In this document: in pieces, positions 14,712 to 29,753 of the stretch
How the letters are laid out: each line of letters begins with the position of its first letter
Numbering within the stretch: the stretch's first letter is position 1
Sequence record: OZ195934.1
Length of the DNA stretch: 64,000 nucleotides
Strand: one strand, 5' to 3'
Program-made: the position numbers and the translations under genes
The notes under the pieces: model-generated
What the model was told of the DNA's origin: nothing
Databases searched by the model: none
What the model saw: the letters and a program-made list of their open reading frames with translations, nothing else

Positions 14712-14737
14712 AAAAAAAGGACGCTATCTGCGTCCTT
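14712..14737 (-). terminator. Intrinsic terminator
   Basis: Minus strand AAAGGACGC-AGATA-GCGTCCTTTTTTT. Confidence 0.8.
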
Positions 14738-15248
14738 TAGTTTTGTTTCTTTTTAGTTTTCGTTTGAGCTTGCGAACTTCTTTACGCTTCGCGATTTTAT
14801 CAGCTCGTCGAACCGCGTCATAATCCGCAGCACAAGACGCTGCAAACGCATCGGGCTTGAATACTGGCTCTTGACCCACATATCCGAAGATCGTGCCCTT
14901 AGCTTCGTTATACGCGACGCTAGACTTGTGTTTAGGGTCTGGGTTAATGTCAACGTGTACTTCAAAGCCGCGAGGGCCGCACATTGGCTTAACTTTCAAC
15001 GCACATTCACCTGCTTTGTATACTTCGTTCATCAAGCGGCTACGAATACCATCAGTAGATGACATATAGGCTTTCTCAGTTTCGATTGTTTTGAATACTT
15101 GAGCGCCTTTACTGCCTTCCAAGTGAATTATGATTACAGTCGCGTAACTGATCATATCACTTTTTCGTTTACTGTCACACCCAACATAGATCGTGCTACT
15201 CGGGTGACTATTTTGAATCGCTGTTTCTACAGCTTCCCAATCGAACAT
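14724..15248 (-). CDS. RNase H-like YkuK/DUF458 family protein
   Basis: IYVGCDS, RLMNEV, EVHVDIN, KPDAFAASCAAD motifs. Confidence 0.8.
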   Translation of the reverse strand: MFDWEAVETAIQNSHPSSTIYVGCDSKRKSDMISYATVIIIHLEGSKGAQVFKTIETEKAYMSSTDGIRSRLMNEVYKAGECALKVKPMCGPRGFEVHVDINPDPKHKSSVAYNEAKGTIFGYVGQEPVFKPDAFAASCAADYDAVRRADKIAKRKEVRKLKRKLKRNKTKGRR

Positions 15249-15297
15249 GTTTCACCTCGTTACAAAAAAGGGTAGCGACGTGCTACCCTCTGTGTAC

Positions 15298-16731
15298 TTA
15301 TAAAGCGTATCGGTCGACACCGACAGTCTTCAGCATGATTTTCACTGGCTCAAGCTCACCACCCAACAGCGACGTTAGAATTGAAGGGCTGCAACCCGAC
15401 ACTAACGCTGTGTTCGCTTCACCTGATTTAACAGGCACGTTGTCTAGACGACCACGCAAGTTCCAGAACACTAGTTGCGGCATTTCGTAGCCCGCGTTCG
15501 CATACATGACTTTGATTGCATCGAAGTTCGTAGTGTTACGAGTATGCCAGCCACCGCCAGTACGAGCTTGATCGAATTCCATATCGCTCATGATAAGCAA
15601 TTTGGTTGGCATTTCGTCTTGCGACAAGTTTGCCGTACGAGCGCGTTCAAGAAGAACTTCGAAGCATCGTGTGATGTTCGTGCTCATATCTTCGCCAGAT
15701 CGTTGCATGTTGTCAAGACGCGACTTCAAGCTATCACCCGTCAACTTGTGAAAGTGCGGATCACTTGAGAACGAAATGAATTGATCTTTGAAGATACCCT
15801 CATTACGTTCAGCGACGTAGATGCCAAGAGACATCGCAACTTCTTTACAAGTCACACTACCACCGTGTTCACCGTTGATACCACAGCCCATAGAGCCAGA
15901 AACATCAACAACTGGAATCACGCGCTCGTCAGAGCCTTCCATGTAGTTCGGTAGAGCTTTCCATTGCTCATTTGCAACACGATGGTCACCCATTTTAACG
16001 CTGCGAACAACATCGTACGGGTAAACAGCACCTGCATTGATCTTCGCTTCACCTTTCACAAGCGATGTGATGTACTCACCGTATGCAGATTCAGCGTTAC
16101 GACCGAATGCTTTCTGATAGCGTGCAGACGCTACAGATGGCAGTTTGCCGAACTCGATCTCGTCCCAATTACGAGCACACATCTTCTGTTCAACAGTGTC
16201 AGACAAAAGAGAGATCACTTTACGCCACTGCTTCGCGTTTACACCAACCGACTTGATTGTGCGCTTGAACACGATAGCGTTTTTGCTGCGCTCACGAGGA
16301 AACCACTTAGCAGCAAGCGCGTTTTTGTCATTGACAATCGCGTGTGTCCACAGAGTGATAGCATCAGCTTCAAGAGAAGTACCGAACGCAGATACTAAGT
16401 CATCGAAACGACCAAGTTCTGGGATCTTGCGCATAACTAGACGCGCCACTTCTGGTTGTTCTTTACACAGACGTGCAAAGATTTTGCGGAAAGTACCGCG
16501 CTCACCTGCACCGCCACGCACGTCGCGAGACCATAGCAAGATGCGAGTTGCAAGCTCAGGGTTTTCACCGAATGCGCGATTAAACGCAGTTAGTGACTGA
16601 TCATTACCGCGCATAGCGCCGATAGTGAAGAACAAGTTTAGACACTCGTTACCCGAAGTGCTGTGTGTTACTGCACCGTTTGCTGTACGTGAATCGTTAG
16701 ATTGCATAGCGTTCATAAATAAACTAGTCAT
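15298..16731 (-). CDS. DUF2828-family TROVE/Ro60-like helical protein with C-terminal vWA domain
   Basis: RDVRGGAGER, GRFDDL, LAAKWFPRE, VVDVSGSM (MIDAS), SDMEFD, FWNLR; start re-assigned to ATG 16731 after SD GGAG. Confidence 0.85.
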   Translation of the reverse strand: MTSLFMNAMQSNDSRTANGAVTHSTSGNECLNLFFTIGAMRGNDQSLTAFNRAFGENPELATRILLWSRDVRGGAGERGTFRKIFARLCKEQPEVARLVMRKIPELGRFDDLVSAFGTSLEADAITLWTHAIVNDKNALAAKWFPRERSKNAIVFKRTIKSVGVNAKQWRKVISLLSDTVEQKMCARNWDEIEFGKLPSVASARYQKAFGRNAESAYGEYITSLVKGEAKINAGAVYPYDVVRSVKMGDHRVANEQWKALPNYMEGSDERVIPVVDVSGSMGCGINGEHGGSVTCKEVAMSLGIYVAERNEGIFKDQFISFSSDPHFHKLTGDSLKSRLDNMQRSGEDMSTNITRCFEVLLERARTANLSQDEMPTKLLIMSDMEFDQARTGGGWHTRNTTNFDAIKVMYANAGYEMPQLVFWNLRGRLDNVPVKSGEANTALVSGCSPSILTSLLGGELEPVKIMLKTVGVDRYAL

Positions 16732-16767
16732 TGCTGTAAGCTCCAAATATCAAGGATCAGAAAAATA

Positions 16768-17358
16768 ATGTTTCATATTGTATATCAAATAACAAATTTA
16801 ATAAACAACAAAATTTACGTCGGTAAGCATTCAACCGAAAACATTCATGACGAATACATGGGTTCGGGAAAGCTTTTGCTCAGAGCCATTAAAAAGTATG
16901 GCAAGGAGAATTTCACAAAAGACATACTGTTCGTATCATTAGACGAAAAGGATGCATATAAAGCAGAACATGAGATCGTGAATGAAGATTTTGTTCTCCG
17001 TGAAGACACATATAATCTCAAAGTTGGCGGTCTTGGTGGATCATCAGGAATAGAATCTCCATGCAAAGGTCGTCAACTGAGTGAAGATACTAAACTAAAA
17101 ATGAGAAAAAGTAAACAATTTTCTCAAAAACATTTAGATTATCTCTCAACTAAATTATCTGAGTACAACAAATCTAGACAAGGTGTTCAAAGAGACGATC
17201 TAAAGGGTAACTCAAACCCAATGCATCGAGGTAATTGGCATACACCCCACGGAATATTTGAAACATCAAGCGAAGCAGCGTGTGCCATAAAATGTAGTCA
17301 ATCAACAATTGTTAGACGTTGCAAAAATCCAAATTTTGAGGATTGGTACATCAAATAA
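16768..17358 (+). mobile_element. Free-standing GIY-YIG homing endonuclease (Seg-like), antisense insertion
   Basis: IVYQITNLINNKIYVGKH, YMGSG, F.K.IL...E, YNLKVGG, C-terminal HTH; AT-rich. Confidence 0.85.
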
Positions 17359-17667
17359 CTATCGTTGTCTGTGCAACGATGTGCCATTCTTATGAATTTC
17401 GATCAGAATCGTGCCGCCAGTTTCGTAGTTCGTACGAACAGAACGATAGTCGTATTTCTCAAAGAAGTTGCGAATAATAGTCGCACCTTTCTTATCAGTA
17501 TCGGTAAGATGCACATCAACTTTGATGCGAATCGGGAAATCTGCGTTATTCTTGACAGCCGCCATGAATTCGCGTTCGCACTGCTTAGTGTAGTGCTCAG
17601 AAAGAACGCGACGTTCTTCTAGCACTCGCTCTTCGATGTTTTTACGTAGCTCGTCATGTTTAATCAT
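17359..17667 (-). CDS. Hypothetical protein
   Basis: ORF in early operon, start at MIKHDEL. Confidence 0.7.
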   Translation of the reverse strand: MIKHDELRKNIEERVLEERRVLSEHYTKQCEREFMAAVKNNADFPIRIKVDVHLTDTDKKGATIIRNFFEKYDYRSVRTNYETGGTILIEIHKNGTSLHRQR

Positions 17668-20993: not shown

Positions 20994-21184
20994 AGACATT
21001 CGTGAACAGTTTTAAAGTCTTTCGCATTAATCACATTTGACTTTCATGTTTAACGATACATGAATCCCTACCAACAAGTTGATAGTCGTACCTTCGAGTT
21101 TATTGCTTTAAGTCACCGAGAATGCGGCTATGCGTTACTCTATCTCTTATTTAAGTTTTGTTAGTTGGTTGCTGTACAATGTCT
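20994..21184 (-). ncRNA. Y-like structured RNA closed by AGACAUU/AAUGUCU with GUACAGCAA and ACG motif strands
   Basis: End-pairing, internal hairpins CUAUCAAC/GUUGGUAG and UUCAUGU/ACAUGAA, no ORF. Confidence 0.6.
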
Positions 21185-21194
21185 TTGCAAAATT

Positions 21195-22646: not shown

Positions 22647-22745
22647 CACCACATTGTTTGTGGTCTACGTGAAGAACCTCTGCACAACAATCCCGCTCTA
22701 ATTGCGTTATGTGGTGACTGTCACGAGGAATCTAGTCTTCTTTAA
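22647..22745 (+). pseudogene. Remnant of an HNH endonuclease C-terminus
   Basis: Frame reads HHIVCGLREEPLHNNPALIALCGDCHEESSLL*, preceded by in-frame TGA and no start. Confidence 0.5.
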
Positions 22746-22770: not shown

Positions 22771-23060
22771 AGACAATAACGAAGTGTTTTTTCGTCTTTT
22801 ACATAAATCGCAGTTGACTATCTTGTTACTCTAACAAGCAAGTATCGACTACCTCAGCGTCGCGCCTAGACTGTGTATTTCTACACGCCACATCTTTCGT
22901 TACAAGTCTCGACCTAGCACGTTGTTGCTGTGCTGAACGTCTCGAACCCACGCTAAGACCTAATCATTGTTTTAGTAGATTAGTAGTTTGGTTGCTGCAT
23001 ATTGTCTTACGTGACAGTCAAACACACAATGCCGAAACAATATGCCGAGACGTTCACGCT
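22771..23060 (-). ncRNA. Large structured RNA with two CAGCAA motifs
   Basis: AGACAAUA/UAUUGUCU, GAACGUCUCG/CGAGACGUUC and UCUUAGCGU/ACGCUGAGG long-range helices. Confidence 0.55.
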
Positions 23061-23656: not shown

Positions 23657-23766
23657 GAGTGTCGTTTATACCGCGTCTCCAAGACCTGAGATACCAACTC
23701 AGCATGGGATTCGAACCCACCGACGTTTCTTGTATCGAAAGAAATTTTAAATTGCTGTAAACACTC
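23657..23766 (-). ncRNA. Circularly permuted tRNA-mimic (YrlA-like architecture), 110 nt
   Basis: Ends GAGUGU/ACACUC; order: motif strand, anticodon-like hairpin, T arm GUGGG-UUCGAAU-CCCAU, capped acceptor hairpin, D-like hairpin, motif partner strand. Confidence 0.7.
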
Positions 23767-23775
23767 TTAGTATTT

Positions 23776-26080: not shown

Positions 26081-26109
26081 AAAAACTTTTGTAGAACTTC
26101 GTTCTTACA

Positions 26110-26230
26110 TTGTACATGATGTTTTCTTCGTTGTAAACATCTTTTTTGAAAAACTTTTCGTTCGTTTTCGAACGTTTAAATGCTTTTCTCTATTGTACAT
26201 GATGTTTTCGTCATTGTAAACATCTTTTTT
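26110..26230 (-). promoter_or_regulatory. Tandem duplicated T4-type early promoters driving the tRNA array
   Basis: Two near-identical copies of AAAAAAGAT-GTTTACA-17 nt-TACAAT (about 26110-26147 and 26193-26230). Confidence 0.8.
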
Positions 26231-26378
26231 AAATCTTTTTGAATGACTTAACGTTTTTGTTTTAACACGTTAATCATATCACTCGTTTACGACTCGTTAA
26301 ACACTTATTTGTGAATAATTTCGTTAAATTCTATCATCGCGACAGTAGATAACGAGACACGGTCCTAAACGTATCGTT

Positions 26379-27085: not shown

Positions 27086-27200
27086 TGGCTGACCGATGCG
27101 GGACTCGAACCCACGACCACGTGCTTAACAGGCAATTAGAAATGCGGTAGCGATACTTATCAATATCATTTACGTGCTCTACCACTGAGCTAATCGGTCA
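27086..27200 (-). ncRNA. tRNA-Asn(GUU)-shaped RNA with 38-nt insertion in the anticodon stem
   Basis: Deleting 27134-27171 restores stem CGUGC/GCACG and loop CUGUUAA; 8-bp acceptor; G73-CCA. Confidence 0.75.
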
Positions 27201-28218: not shown

Positions 28219-28230
28219 ATAATTTCCTCT

Positions 28231-28471
28231 TGTTGCCGCTCCGTGGAATCGAACCACGTCAAACACAACACCTCGTCAGCCCAATAAGAGTTTCGAAGTA
28301 AGAGCTTACTAGCACATTAAAGCACGGGGCATTATTTCTCTCAAGCAGTTTTCGACCACCGCGTGAGCTTTCTTATCCCCAGTCCCAGTGATTCAGAACG
28401 AAACATGATAGCGAGTCATGAGTTGAACTAATGTTGGGAAAACACTGCGTATTGTACACCGAGTAAGCGGC
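28231..28471 (-). ncRNA. About 240-nt RNA with tRNA-like acceptor stem and T arm (tmRNA-like topology, non-Ala acceptor)
   Basis: 5' GCCGCUU pairs with 3' GAGCGGC after T arm CGUGG-UUCGAUU-CCACG; internal GCAGUGUUUUC/GAAAACUGC helix. Confidence 0.6.
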
Positions 28472-28485
28472 ATTGTTAATAAACT

Positions 28486-28605
28486 TGGTGCCCTACGTGA
28501 ACGTTGAACGTTTTTCTACTTAGCTTCCATCTACCTCACTCAACGAAGAGCTATAGATTCCGTCAAGGTCTACTTCCACTTGACTAAGCGATTCAAACGT
28601 AGGAC
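28486..28605 (-). ncRNA. 120-nt CCA-ending RNA with acceptor-like stem but no cloverleaf
   Basis: GUCCUACG/CGUAGGGC-A-CCA; no T or anticodon arm. Confidence 0.65.
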
Positions 28606-28644
28606 ATATTTTGAAAGTAGTCTCGTAAAACTACTTTGAGAATA

Positions 28645-28723: not shown

Positions 28724-29089
28724 TTATGTTTCTAGCCATCTACCAATCTTTGCAGCGAAGATGTTTTCTTCTTCGTTGATTAGCGCAGTCGATTTCATTT
28801 GATGAAACATATCTTGCTTGTGAAGCGTATCAAGTTTGACTGCACATTGCAACAACTCTTTTACGCTTCGCATAATTTCTTCTGAATCAAGCTGCGACGT
28901 TTCAGGATGATAAATCAAATTCTGAAGCACAGCTTCTATGTTGCCGTAACAACCCATACCAATAAAATTGATGATAAGTCGATACTGCATTTCTACTGAG
29001 AATGAACAATGCTTGCGCAAATTGCGCTTAACGACTTCACATACTAGCAACTTCTCTTCGAGTTCTTGCTTTATTGCTGTAAACTTCAT
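28724..29089 (-). CDS. Hypothetical protein, 121 aa
   Basis: SD GAGGTG, ORF. Confidence 0.7.
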   Translation of the reverse strand: MKFTAIKQELEEKLLVCEVVKRNLRKHCSFSVEMQYRLIINFIGMGCYGNIEAVLQNLIYHPETSQLDSEEIMRSVKELLQCAVKLDTLHKQDMFHQMKSTALINEEENIFAAKIGRWLET

Positions 29090-29105: not shown

Positions 29106-29228
29106 TGGTGGAGAGTGCGGGATTCGAACCACGCGGCCAAAAGATTTACTTAGTTAGTGTTTGCAGCATGAATACTTGACAATATTCTGTCAACGTTCTT
29201 TTGCTCTACCAGACTGAGCTAACTCTCC
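29106..29228 (-). ncRNA. tRNA-shaped RNA with about 50-nt domain replacing the anticodon loop
   Basis: Normal acceptor, D and T arms plus CCA; AAAGA/UCUUU stem encloses ACG-hairpin-GUAUUCAUGCUGCAA. Confidence 0.75.
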
Positions 29229-29234
29229 ATTTAA

Positions 29235-29374
29235 AACACATTGAGCAGGGTGCAGGATTCGAACCTGCGTCACGATCTTAGAATGATATGCTGTTTGGGT
29301 TGCTGAATACAAGCTATACAACTTGCGTTTATGCTACGTGTGCTAGCCACTACACCAACCCTGCTCAATGTGTT
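29235..29374 (-). ncRNA. tRNA-shaped RNA with 49-nt motif insertion in anticodon stem, flanked by 17-bp helix
   Basis: D arm GGUGUAGUGGCUAGCAC, T arm GCAGG-UUCGAAU-CCUGC, insert carries UAUUCAGCAACC. Confidence 0.75.
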
Positions 29375-29607: not shown

Positions 29608-29753
29608 TAGAGCATATTGGTCGTGCGTACTAGAATCGAACTAGTCCTACGATCTCCTAATGATATGCGTTATTGGTTGCTGAATACTTACTTGTCAGTA
29701 AGCGTTATGCTACGTGTGCTGCCACTACACCAACGCACGACCAATATGCTCTA
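29608..29753 (-). ncRNA. Paralogue of 29235..29374 with 48-nt insertion, flanked by 21-bp helix, CCA encoded
   Basis: Same conserved insert, compensatory changes in all helices. Confidence 0.75.

What the first reader, a model, noticed from the sequence alone, without database searches (positions are those of the whole stretch)
16722..16746. The RNA-family motif sits between the SD and start codon of the DUF2828 gene (autoregulation)
Minus strand reads GGAG-CUUACAGCA-AUG, so CUUACAGCAA fills the whole SD-to-AUG spacer. A downstream UUUAUGAACG-CU in the early coding sequence resembles the partner strand. Inference: the protein represses its own translation when ncRNA ligands are limiting, as ribosomal proteins and T4 gp32/RegA do. 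This is independent support that the motif is this protein's ligand.
Basis: partly seen in the sequence, partly recalled or inferred. Interest (0 to 1): 0.75.

Follow-up and report, generated by a model that had tools for sequence, protein, structure and literature searches.

The report
Endonuclease-rebuilt start of phage Ro60-like gene
The flagged 25 bases are the ribosome-binding site of a vibriophage Ro60-like RNA-binding-protein gene as rewritten by a homing-endonuclease insertion; they keep only the 10-base core of a real RNA motif whose complete form sits in the gene's native leader in related phages, so self-regulation is plausible there but not shown here.

Summary
The sequence is as described: GGAG, CUUACAGCA, AUG on the minus strand. 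The window is Vibrio phage D483, a KVP40-like phage. The gene product has a predicted Ro60 fold.

This start region belongs to a ~660-bp Seg-like GIY-YIG homing-endonuclease cassette. The cassette replaced the native early promoter, the 45-nt leader and the first three codons.

There is a real RNA module: a short helix arm followed by single-stranded UNUACAGCAA. It marks three Y-RNA-like ncRNAs in the tRNA cluster. In hairpin form it also occurs in four tRNA-like RNAs.

Endonuclease-free relatives carry a full copy in the Ro-like gene's 5'UTR. In the whole KVP40 genome that is the only mRNA site. There the arm GACAUU can pair with AAUGUC, which contains the start codon.

In this window only UUACAGCAAU survives. 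It scores 6.2 bits on the motif matrix and is not detected by the covariance model.

Autoregulation by ligand mimicry is a reasonable, untested inference for native alleles. It is doubtful for this allele.

The parts
16741..16744 (-). Shine-Dalgarno GGAG of the Ro60-like gene in the endonuclease-bearing allele
   Evidence: Read directly. It lies 9 nt upstream of the ATG. It is identical in the three cassette-bearing lineages: this window/D483, CZ01 and VH1_2019.
16730..16740 (-). CTTACAGCAAT, the core of the RNA motif. It fills the SD-AUG spacer and overlaps the A and T of the start codon.
   Evidence: TTACAGCAAT is identical to the core of the native KVP40 and L007 leaders. It scores 6.2 bits on the extended matrix and is not found by covariance model R1. 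It is 100% conserved in the three cassette lineages, whose endonuclease ORFs are only 77-82% identical.
16729..16731 (-). ATG start codon of the DUF2828/DUF7788 (Ro60-like) gene
   Evidence: It is the annotated start in D483.
16708..16719 (-). It is codons 5-8 (F-M-N-A) and the first sequence shared with endonuclease-free alleles.
   Evidence: Alignment A1. It is conserved as coding sequence in all alleles, and the Aeromonas orthologue has K-F-M-N-A-M. No pairing with the core is predicted.
16680..16687 (-). Second TACAGCAA, inside codons 14-17 (R-T-A-N)
   Evidence: T16, N18 and G19 are invariant residues. The nucleotides differ in L007 (CGCACAGTAAAC) and in AsFcp_1, so coding constraint explains it.
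15298..16731 (-). Ro60-like RNA-binding-protein gene (DUF2828 + DUF7788, PHROG 850)
   Evidence: Pfam and PHROGs, E 8.8e-161. The AF2 model has pLDDT 83. Foldseek top nine hits are all Ro60/TROVE: Xenopus Ro60 TM 0.65, Thermus phage phiLo Ro60, D. radiodurans Rsr.
16768..17358 (+). Seg-like GIY-YIG homing endonuclease, divergent from all neighbouring genes
   Evidence: Pfam SegE_GIY-YIG 26.7 bits. PHROG 314, E 2e-47. It is present in D483-type phages, CZ01 and VH1_2019. It is absent from K575 and 6E35.1a, which are 99.8% identical in the flank, and from nt-1, KVP40 and F86.
16721..17385 (.). Replacement tract of the endonuclease cassette. It comprises a new SD, start and three to four codons for the Ro-like gene, the endonuclease ORF, and the new last ~8 codons of the upstream gene.
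   Evidence: Homology with K575 ends at window 16720. Alignments A1 and A2 give both borders. The native promoter TTTACG-16-TATAAT and the 45-nt leader seen in K575 are missing here, and no comparable promoter lies within ~400 nt upstream.
20994..21185 (-). s1 RNA, Y-RNA-like. The 5' arm AGACAUU (21184-21178) is followed by GUACAGCAAC. The 3' arm AAUGUCU is 21000-20994. A terminator follows.
   Evidence: Matrix score 27.1 bits. The helix arms come and the MFE fold. The site is conserved in KVP40, nt-1 and F86.
22771..23008 (-). s2 RNA. The 5' arm AGACAAUA (23007-23000) is followed by UGCAGCAAC. The 3' arm UAUUGUCU is 22778-22771.
   Evidence: F86 has AGGCAAU / AUUGCCU, a compensatory double change.
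23657..23768 (-). s3 RNA. The 5' arm GAGUGUU (23766-23760) is followed by UACAGCAAU. It encloses a hairpin and a T-arm. The 3' arm GACACUC is 23663-23657.
   Evidence: It is conserved in KVP40, nt-1 and F86.
29615..29745 (-). tRNA-like RNA A2 with a hairpin-plus-UAUUCAGCAACC insert. Its relatives are A (29240-29362), B (29106-29228) and C (27088-27199).
   Evidence: Rfam tRNA hits with 110-120-nt spans. KVP40 annotates three tRNA-like RNAs here as tRNA-Pseudo-3/4/5. Hairpin covariation: 96.9% of cells paired, 5 of 5 pairs with compensatory changes. Model R1 scores 20-49 bits.

Best explanation
The flagged bases are the translation-initiation region of the phage's Ro60-like gene, in the form created by a Seg-like GIY-YIG homing-endonuclease cassette (about 16721-17385). 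The cassette overwrote the native early promoter, the 45-nt leader and the first three codons. It supplies a new SD (GGAG) and a new start.

The spacer sequence UUACAGCAAU is the single-stranded core of a genuine RNA module. The module is a short helix arm immediately followed by U-N-U-A-C-A-G-C-A-A. In this phage clade it occurs at three kinds of site:
- at the 5' end of three Y-RNA-like ncRNAs in the tRNA cluster, where the arm pairs with the RNA's 3' end;
- as hairpin plus core in the expanded anticodon arm of four tRNA-like RNAs;
- once in an mRNA, in the native 5'UTR of the Ro-like gene.

In the native 5'UTR the arm GACAUU can pair with AAUGUC, which contains the start codon, and the SD lies in the enclosed loop.

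Inferred mechanism for native alleles: the Ro-like protein binds this module on its ncRNA partners. When those partners are limiting it binds the look-alike on its own mRNA, holds the AUG in a helix or blocks the SD, and so represses its own translation.

In this window the helix arm is gone and only the core remains, wedged between SD and AUG. It most likely got there by descent, when the cassette invaded the leader. Any feedback here would have to work through the core alone and is probably weakened or lost.

Shown: the sequence, the cassette and its borders, the motif family and its helices, its uniqueness among mRNA sites, and the Ro60-like fold. Inferred: protein-motif binding and repression.
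For: Cassette:
- The flank is 99.8% identical in phages with and without the endonuclease.
- Homology breaks at window 16720 and at about 17385.
- The native promoter and leader are seen in K575, nt-1, KVP40, L007 and F86.

Motif family:
- A matrix trained only on s1-s3 scores the native leaders 20.3-23.6 bits.
- In the complete KVP40 genome only s1, s2, s3 and the Ro-like 5'UTR reach 20 bits. Shuffled genomes give 0.13 such hits.

RNA structure, not DNA signal:
- The bases 5' of the core pair with a distal strand, and the pairs differ between members. Examples are AGACAUU/AAUGUCU, AGACAAUA/UAUUGUCU, GAGUGU/ACACUC, AGAGUGA/UCACUCU and AGGCUGA/UCAGCCU. F86 has a compensatory AGGCAAU/AUUGCCU.
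- The hairpin form covaries strongly.

Link to the protein:
- The predicted fold is Ro60-like.
- Motif-like modules lie on the gene's strand near distant orthologues: 13 sense hits, 2 antisense, 2.6 expected per strand.
- In L078 and L069 the modules sit directly upstream of the gene.

Native operator geometry: the GACAUU/AAUGUC helix appears in the minimum-energy fold of 4 of 4 native leaders tested.

This window: the core 10-mer is identical to the KVP40 leader core and is rare. It is invariant in three cassette lineages whose endonuclease genes are 77-82% identical.
Against: - No binding or expression data exist.
- The native helix is weak (-3.2 to -3.8 kcal/mol, no better than shuffles). 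Both of its strands are invariant, so covariation cannot test it.
- An alternative partner, GAGUGUCU at about +110, also exists.
- The Aeromonas orthologue and 60 distant orthologues have no motif in their leaders, so any feedback loop is clade-specific.
- In this window the site fails both models (6.2 bits; not reported by R1).
- The region is predicted to be unstructured.
- Its conservation could serve the endonuclease's own 5'UTR on the other strand.
- Ro60-family proteins are not known to me to autoregulate translation.
Confidence: 0.5

Rival explanations
1. In this very allele the core between SD and AUG is a working operator. The Ro-like protein binds UUACAGCAAU and blocks initiation when ncRNA ligands are scarce.
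For: The core lies exactly in the ribosome footprint. The 10-mer is identical to the native leader core and is rare. The 16 nt GGAGCTTACAGCAATG are invariant in three lineages whose surrounding genes are 77-82% identical, whereas native SD-AUG spacers vary. [quoted passage not shown]
Against: The helix arm, present in every bona fide member, is missing. The site scores 6.2 bits against 20-27 for members, and the covariance model gives no hit. The proposed partner strand is coding sequence and is not conserved in the family. The three lineages descend from one cassette, so they are not independent. The same bases are also the endonuclease's 5'UTR.
Confidence: 0.2
2. The module is an RNA processing or stability signal rather than a ligand for the Ro-like protein. 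An endonuclease that frees the s-RNAs from the tRNA polycistron would also cut or protect the native Ro-like mRNA. Its remnant in this window would then be functionless.
For: s1 and s3 begin 12-14 nt after a tRNA 3' end, so their 5' ends must be made by processing. The module sits at the 5' edge of each RNA. An RNase H-like gene (PF04308) directly follows the Ro-like gene. The Aeromonas phage keeps the ncRNA motif but lacks it in the mRNA leader.
Against: This does not explain why, of all the mRNAs in the KVP40 genome, only the Ro-like gene carries the module. It also does not explain why modules cluster beside orthologues in distant phages, which is the classic Ro-Y RNA synteny.
Confidence: 0.15
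3. The conservation of these bases serves the homing endonuclease, not the Ro-like gene. On the + strand they are the endonuclease's 5'UTR, downstream of a late-promoter-like CATAAATA, and possibly an operator or a relic of its target site. The match to the motif would be inherited from the invaded leader, or be chance.
For: The endonuclease ATG is 36 nt from the Ro-like ATG, on the other strand. CATAAATA at 16714-16721 (+), one mismatch from the T4-type late promoter TATAAATA, is created by cassette-specific codons and is kept in the CZ01 and VH1 sequences. No sigma-70-type promoter for the endonuclease was found. From my own knowledge, I-TevI represses its own promoter through a target-like operator.
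Against: This is an indirect argument with no test of promoter use. A perfect 10-mer match to the native core is unlikely by chance. It does not bear on the native alleles.
Confidence: 0.1
4. The extended motif is a DNA-level promoter element. It would be the box of an unknown middle-transcription activator, since KVP40 and nt-1 have AsiA but no recognisable MotA.
For: KVP40 and nt-1 have asiA but no recognisable motA (PMC2988021). The motif precedes transcription units, and A/T-rich TAnnnT-like hexamers follow it.
Against: The bases 5' of the core pair with distal strands and show compensatory changes, so the motif lies inside the RNAs. The distance to any -10-like hexamer varies from 2 to 7 nt. 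In the native leader such a promoter would start transcription at or after the SD.
Confidence: 0.05

Closest known systems
E. coli thrS operator and ribosomal-protein / T4 gp32, gp43 and RegA translational autoregulation by ligand mimicry
   Same: An RNA-binding protein would recognise, in its own mRNA next to the ribosome-binding site, a copy of the structure it binds on its main RNA partners. In the native alleles the mimic is a helix arm plus a single-stranded core, with the AUG in the helix and the SD in the loop.
   Different: Nothing has been shown biochemically. The regulator would be a Ro60/TROVE-type protein, for which I know of no autoregulation. The mimic is confined to one phage clade. 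In this window it has been truncated to the core by a mobile element.
Ro60 (Rsr)-Y RNA / YrlA ribonucleoproteins of bacteria and phages
   Same: The predicted fold is a Ro60-like ring plus vWA domain. The candidate partner RNAs have their 5' and 3' ends paired into a stem with a conserved strand motif, have tRNA-like parts, and are encoded near the protein gene.
   Different: The protein matches Pfam DUF2828/DUF7788, not TROVE, and is 12-16% identical to solved Ro60s. The conserved motif is UACAGCAA, not the GNCGAA / GGUCCGA reported for Y RNAs (PMC4201824). Rfam YrlA gives only a sub-threshold, permuted hit (28 bits against a threshold of 69). Four candidates keep normal tRNA topology, with the module in the anticodon arm.
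T4-type free-standing Seg/Mob homing endonucleases
   Same: It has a GIY-YIG Seg-like ORF and a presence/absence polymorphism between near-identical phages. It is inserted between conserved genes, and the flanking gene ends are replaced.
   Different: It is oriented against all its neighbours. It overwrites the promoter and leader of the downstream gene and provides that gene with a new SD and start. Its cleavage site is unknown.

Membership tests
Translational autoregulation by mimicry of the regulator's RNA ligand | The regulator is an RNA-binding protein with a primary RNA ligand | tested here: inconclusive
   A Ro60-like fold is predicted, and candidate ligand RNAs carry a shared module. 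Binding was not tested.
Translational autoregulation by mimicry of the regulator's RNA ligand | The mRNA operator resembles the ligand in sequence and structure | tested here: not met
   For this window's allele: 6.2 bits on the motif matrix, no covariance-model hit, helix arm absent. For the native alleles of relatives the feature is met: 20.3-23.6 bits, and an arm that pairs with AAUGUC.
Translational autoregulation by mimicry of the regulator's RNA ligand | The operator overlaps or adjoins the ribosome-binding site | tested here: met
   In this window the core fills the SD-AUG spacer. In native alleles the motif ends 7-9 nt before the SD, and its pairing partner contains the AUG.
Translational autoregulation by mimicry of the regulator's RNA ligand | Protein-dependent repression that is relieved by competitor ligand | not testable with these tools
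   This needs reporter fusions, toeprinting and binding assays.
Ro60/TROVE-Y RNA system | TROVE ring plus vWA domain protein | tested here: inconclusive
   The fold search supports it: the top nine hits are Ro60/TROVE, TM 0.40-0.65, E 9e-9 to 1e-5. Sequence searches give DUF2828/DUF7788, not TROVE, and find no Ro60 in the PDB.
Ro60/TROVE-Y RNA system | Partner ncRNA with a terminal stem carrying a conserved binding motif, encoded near the protein gene | tested here: inconclusive
   s1-s3 have covarying closing stems plus a conserved core and lie 4.4-7 kb from the gene. Modules are adjacent to the gene in L069 and L078. The motif differs from the known Y-RNA motif, and Rfam YrlA is sub-threshold.
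Seg-like GIY-YIG free-standing homing endonuclease | GIY-YIG catalytic domain | tested here: met
   PF19835 scores 26.7 bits (cut-off 25). PF01541 scores 22.1, just under its cut-off of 22.6. PHROG 314, E 2e-47.
Seg-like GIY-YIG free-standing homing endonuclease | Presence/absence polymorphism at one locus between closely related genomes | tested here: met
   D483-type phages carry it and K575 and 6E35.1a lack it, with 99.8% identical flanks. It is found at the same locus in CZ01 and VH1_2019 at 80% protein identity.
Seg-like GIY-YIG free-standing homing endonuclease | Site-specific cleavage of the endonuclease-free allele | not testable with these tools

The most novel reading that the evidence does not exclude
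KVP40-like vibriophages run a Ro60-type ribonucleoprotein system whose protein senses free ligand through a decoy of its Y-like RNA module in its own 5'UTR. This would be the first feedback loop described for the Ro/TROVE family. A homing endonuclease has overwritten that operator in some phages, leaving a minimal core operator in the SD-AUG spacer. Natural pairs of regulated and rewired phages would then exist on the same laboratory host.
Probability: 0.25. Interest if true: 0.75.

Novelty: new variant of a known kind. Interest (0 to 1): 0.6.

Why it matters
Ro60 and Y RNAs are conserved from bacteria to humans, yet the role of phage-encoded versions is essentially unknown. This analysis yields four things:
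- a defined candidate recognition module (helix arm plus UNUACAGCAA);
- a set of candidate partner RNAs;
- a candidate self-regulatory copy in the protein's own mRNA;
- natural alleles in which a mobile endonuclease has replaced that copy.

nt-1 lacks the cassette and CZ01 and VH1_2019 carry it, and all three grow on Vibrio natriegens. That makes binding specificity and feedback control directly testable.

It is also a clear case of a homing endonuclease rewriting the promoter and ribosome-binding site of its neighbour.

Tried and rejected
- An exact-pattern scan of viral contigs for GACATTNTACAGCAA returned 118 or more unrelated single hits and was uninformative.
- By eye, the cassette leader (GAUCC-UUGAUAAU-GGAGC-UUACAGCAAU) looked like the hairpin-plus-core insert of tRNA-like RNA A. 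A covariance model built from 13 such inserts finds A2, B, A, C, s1 and s2 but not this leader, so I dropped that idea.
- The TTTACAGCAAT just after the start of the ORF at 29074 is not conserved in F86, KVP40 or nt-1. It is coding chance.
- The second TACAGCAA, at codons 14-17, is explained by conserved residues and is not kept at nucleotide level in L007 or AsFcp_1.
- The Rfam YrlA hit at 29170-29296 spans the 3' half of one tRNA-like RNA and the 5' half of the next, whose acceptor strands do not pair. It is a permuted artefact.
- The promoter-element reading was rejected because the motif pairs with distal strands inside the RNAs.
- Literature searches for DUF2828 and for phage Ro60 found no study of this protein family.
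Full report
What the window is. Bases 15200-17400 are 100% identical to Vibrio phage D483, a 254-kb KVP40-like (schizo-T4) phage. The flagged gene, 15298-16731 on the minus strand, matches Pfam DUF7788 and DUF2828 and PHROG 850 'RNA-binding protein'. An AlphaFold model built on 33 orthologues has mean pLDDT 83. Its nine best matches in the PDB are all Ro60/TROVE proteins: Xenopus Ro60 (TM 0.65), D. radiodurans Rsr, and a Thermus phage Ro60. Sequence search alone does not reach them. Calling it a Ro60-like RNA-binding protein is therefore reasonable at the level of fold.

The observation. The minus strand reads GGAG (16744-16741), CTTACAGCA (16740-16732), ATG (16731-16729), then ACT AGT TTA TTT ATG AAC GCT. 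The description is therefore correct. The 71 nt around the start are predicted to be less structured than shuffled controls (z = +1.85), and the core does not pair with the downstream UUUAUGAACGCU.

The leader is not native. Immediately upstream, on the opposite strand, lies a Seg-like GIY-YIG homing endonuclease (16768-17358).
- Phages K575 and 6E35.1a are 99.8% identical to the window up to position 16720 and lack the endonuclease.
- nt-1, KVP40, F86 and L007 also lack it.
- CZ01 and VH1_2019 carry an 80%-identical copy at the same place.
- Alignments put the replaced tract at about 16721-17385. It includes the last ~8 codons of the upstream gene and the first codons of the Ro-like gene (M-T-S-L here, M-S-A in native alleles).
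- Native alleles have a T4-early-type promoter (TTTACG-16-TATAAT in K575), a ~45-nt leader, the SD GAGGA, and spacers such as AAAUAACA that do not contain the motif.
- In the window that promoter is gone, and nothing comparable lies within ~400 nt.

The real motif. TACAGCAA occurs 8 times in the window, always on the minus strand. Three copies lie in spacers of the tRNA cluster and share a longer consensus, AAGAC(A)WUNURCAGCAAC:
- s1 at 21168-21185
- s2 at 22991-23008
- s3 at 23751-23768

All three are conserved in KVP40, nt-1 and F86, while their surroundings diverge. The 6-8 nt before the core pair with a strand 100-260 nt downstream, and the pairs differ between members:
- AGACAUU/AAUGUCU
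- AGACAAUA/UAUUGUCU, with a compensatory AGGCAAU/AUUGCCU in F86
- GAGUGU/ACACUC
- In distant phages, AGAGUGA/UCACUCU, AGGCUGA/UCAGCCU and GGAUAG/CUAUCC

These are therefore RNAs whose ends form a closing helix with a conserved single-stranded core beside it, which is a Y-RNA-like design. s3 also contains a T-arm.

A second form of the module is a 5-bp hairpin followed by UAUUCAGCAACC. It fills the expanded anticodon arm of four tRNA-like RNAs (A2, A, B, C); KVP40 annotates three such RNAs at this locus as 'tRNA-Pseudo-3/4/5'. Across 13 copies from five phages the hairpin is 96.9% paired, and all five pairs show compensatory changes.

The motif in the gene's leader. A matrix trained only on s1-s3 scores the native Ro-like leaders as follows:
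- nt-1: 20.3 bits
- F86: 20.6 bits
- KVP40: 20.8 bits
- K575: 23.6 bits

In the complete KVP40 genome (244.8 kb, both strands) only four sites reach 20 bits: s1, s2, s3 and this 5'UTR. Shuffled genomes give 0.13 such sites. The block GACAUU(A/U)UACAGCAA is conserved in five native lineages whose flanking leader bases vary. Its arm GACAUU is complementary to AAUGUC, which is the start codon plus flanking bases. That helix appears in the minimum-energy fold of all four native leaders folded, but it is weak (-3.2 to -3.8 kcal/mol, no better than shuffles). A second possible partner, GAGUGUCU, lies about 110 nt downstream. Both candidate partners are fixed by coding, so covariation cannot choose between them.

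Back to the window. The cassette allele keeps only UUACAGCAAU. That site scores 6.2 bits on the matrix and is not reported by the hairpin-plus-core covariance model at E<=10. The 10-mer is nevertheless identical to the KVP40 and L007 leader core and is rare: once in KVP40 (the leader itself) and three times in the window. The 16 nt GGAGCTTACAGCAATG are invariant in three cassette lineages whose endonuclease ORFs are 77-82% identical. I read this as descent from the invaded leader. The three lineages share one cassette origin. The same bases are also the endonuclease's own 5'UTR, downstream of a late-promoter-like CATAAATA at 16714-16721 on the + strand. For both reasons the conservation cannot be credited to the Ro-like gene alone.

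The partner strand. UUUAUGAACGCU encodes F-M-N-A, the conserved N-terminus. It is kept in alleles with and without the cassette, and the Aeromonas orthologue has K-F-M-N-A-M. The AUAA(A)CGC flank of the window's A and A2 RNAs, which it resembles, is replaced by other sequence in KVP40 and nt-1. It is not part of the motif.

Reach of the idea. Of 60 more distant orthologue leaders (41-54% identity), none has the core within -80 to +20. Aeromonas phage AsFcp_1 has the module in tRNA-like and s-like RNAs but not in its short Ro-like leader. On the other hand, motif-like modules are enriched on the gene's strand in those loci (13 sense, 2 antisense, 2.6 expected per strand), and they sit directly upstream of the gene in L069 and L078. 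This fits the Ro-Y RNA habit of linked genes and supports the module being the protein's ligand. It also shows that a leader copy is a clade-specific addition.

Mechanism and verdict. The best-supported picture has three parts:
- The Ro-like protein recognises helix arm plus core on its ncRNA partners.
- In KVP40-type native alleles, a copy in the 5'UTR lets free protein hold the AUG or SD and lower its own synthesis. This works like the thrS operator or ribosomal-protein feedback.
- In this window a homing endonuclease has replaced that operator, the promoter and the start, leaving the bare core in the SD-AUG spacer.

The specific feature flagged is a truncated remnant in a mobile-element junction, the partner strand is wrong, and repression is untested. 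The rivals, each with a refuting test, are: a working core-only operator, a processing signal, a function for the endonuclease, and a promoter box.

Noticed in passing
29615-29745, 29240-29362, 29106-29228, 27088-27199 (all minus strand): Four tRNA-like RNAs have normal acceptor, D and T arms but a 45-55-nt insert in place of the anticodon loop. The insert is a covarying 5-bp hairpin with a UGAYAA loop, followed by UAUUCAGCAACC-type sequence. KVP40 annotates three tRNA-like RNAs at this locus as tRNA-Pseudo-3/4/5. They may be Y-RNA analogues with an 'inside-out' YrlA topology.
   Followed up: partly
20994-21185, 22771-23008, 23657-23768 (minus strand): Three unannotated Y-RNA-like ncRNAs (s1-s3) lie in the tRNA cluster. 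Each is closed by a helix between its ends, with the UACAGCAA core beside the 5' arm. There are no Rfam matches at E<=1.
   Followed up: partly
23011-23019 with 22716-22724 (minus strand): A further perfect 9-bp long-range complement, GACUGUCAC / GUGACAGUC, brackets the s2 RNA. The mature s2 RNA may therefore be about 300 nt with a two-step closing stem.
   Followed up: no
28230-28620 (minus strand): This ~370-nt non-coding stretch ends in a T-arm and an acceptor-like 3' strand (GCCGCU ... AGCGGC). It looks like another large structured RNA. ARAGORN and Rfam are silent on it.
   Followed up: no
16714-16721 (plus strand): CATAAATA, one mismatch from the T4-type late promoter TATAAATA, lies 46 nt upstream of the endonuclease ATG. 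It is created by the cassette-specific codons of the Ro-like gene. Endonuclease-free alleles read CATAAATG.
   Followed up: partly
16768-17400: The endonuclease points against every neighbouring gene. In cassette alleles the Ro-like gene has lost its own promoter, so it must be transcribed through the antisense endonuclease ORF. 5' antisense overlap of the two mRNAs is therefore possible.
   Followed up: partly
14724-15248 (minus strand): An RNase H-like gene (PF04308, YkuK family) directly follows the Ro-like gene. It is kept in that position in K575, KVP40, nt-1, CZ01 and VH1_2019, and is a possible functional partner.
   Followed up: no
26081-26378 (minus strand): Two near-identical tandem copies of an early-promoter-like unit (GATGTTTACAA ... 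CATCATGTACAAT) lie upstream of the main tRNA block.
   Followed up: no
L078:1320-1495 and L069:1400-1475 (metagenomic phage contigs): In L078, two tandem helix-plus-core modules lie within 170 nt upstream of a distant DUF2828 orthologue's ATG. In L069, one module ending in a terminator-like U-run lies about 30 nt upstream of the ATG. These are either adjacent ncRNA genes or structured leaders.
   Followed up: partly
Whole window and KVP40 genome: The bare 8-mer TACAGCAA is about 3.5-fold over-represented genome-wide (26 in KVP40), mostly in the sense strand of coding regions. The 8-mer alone is therefore weak evidence for the motif.
   Followed up: yes
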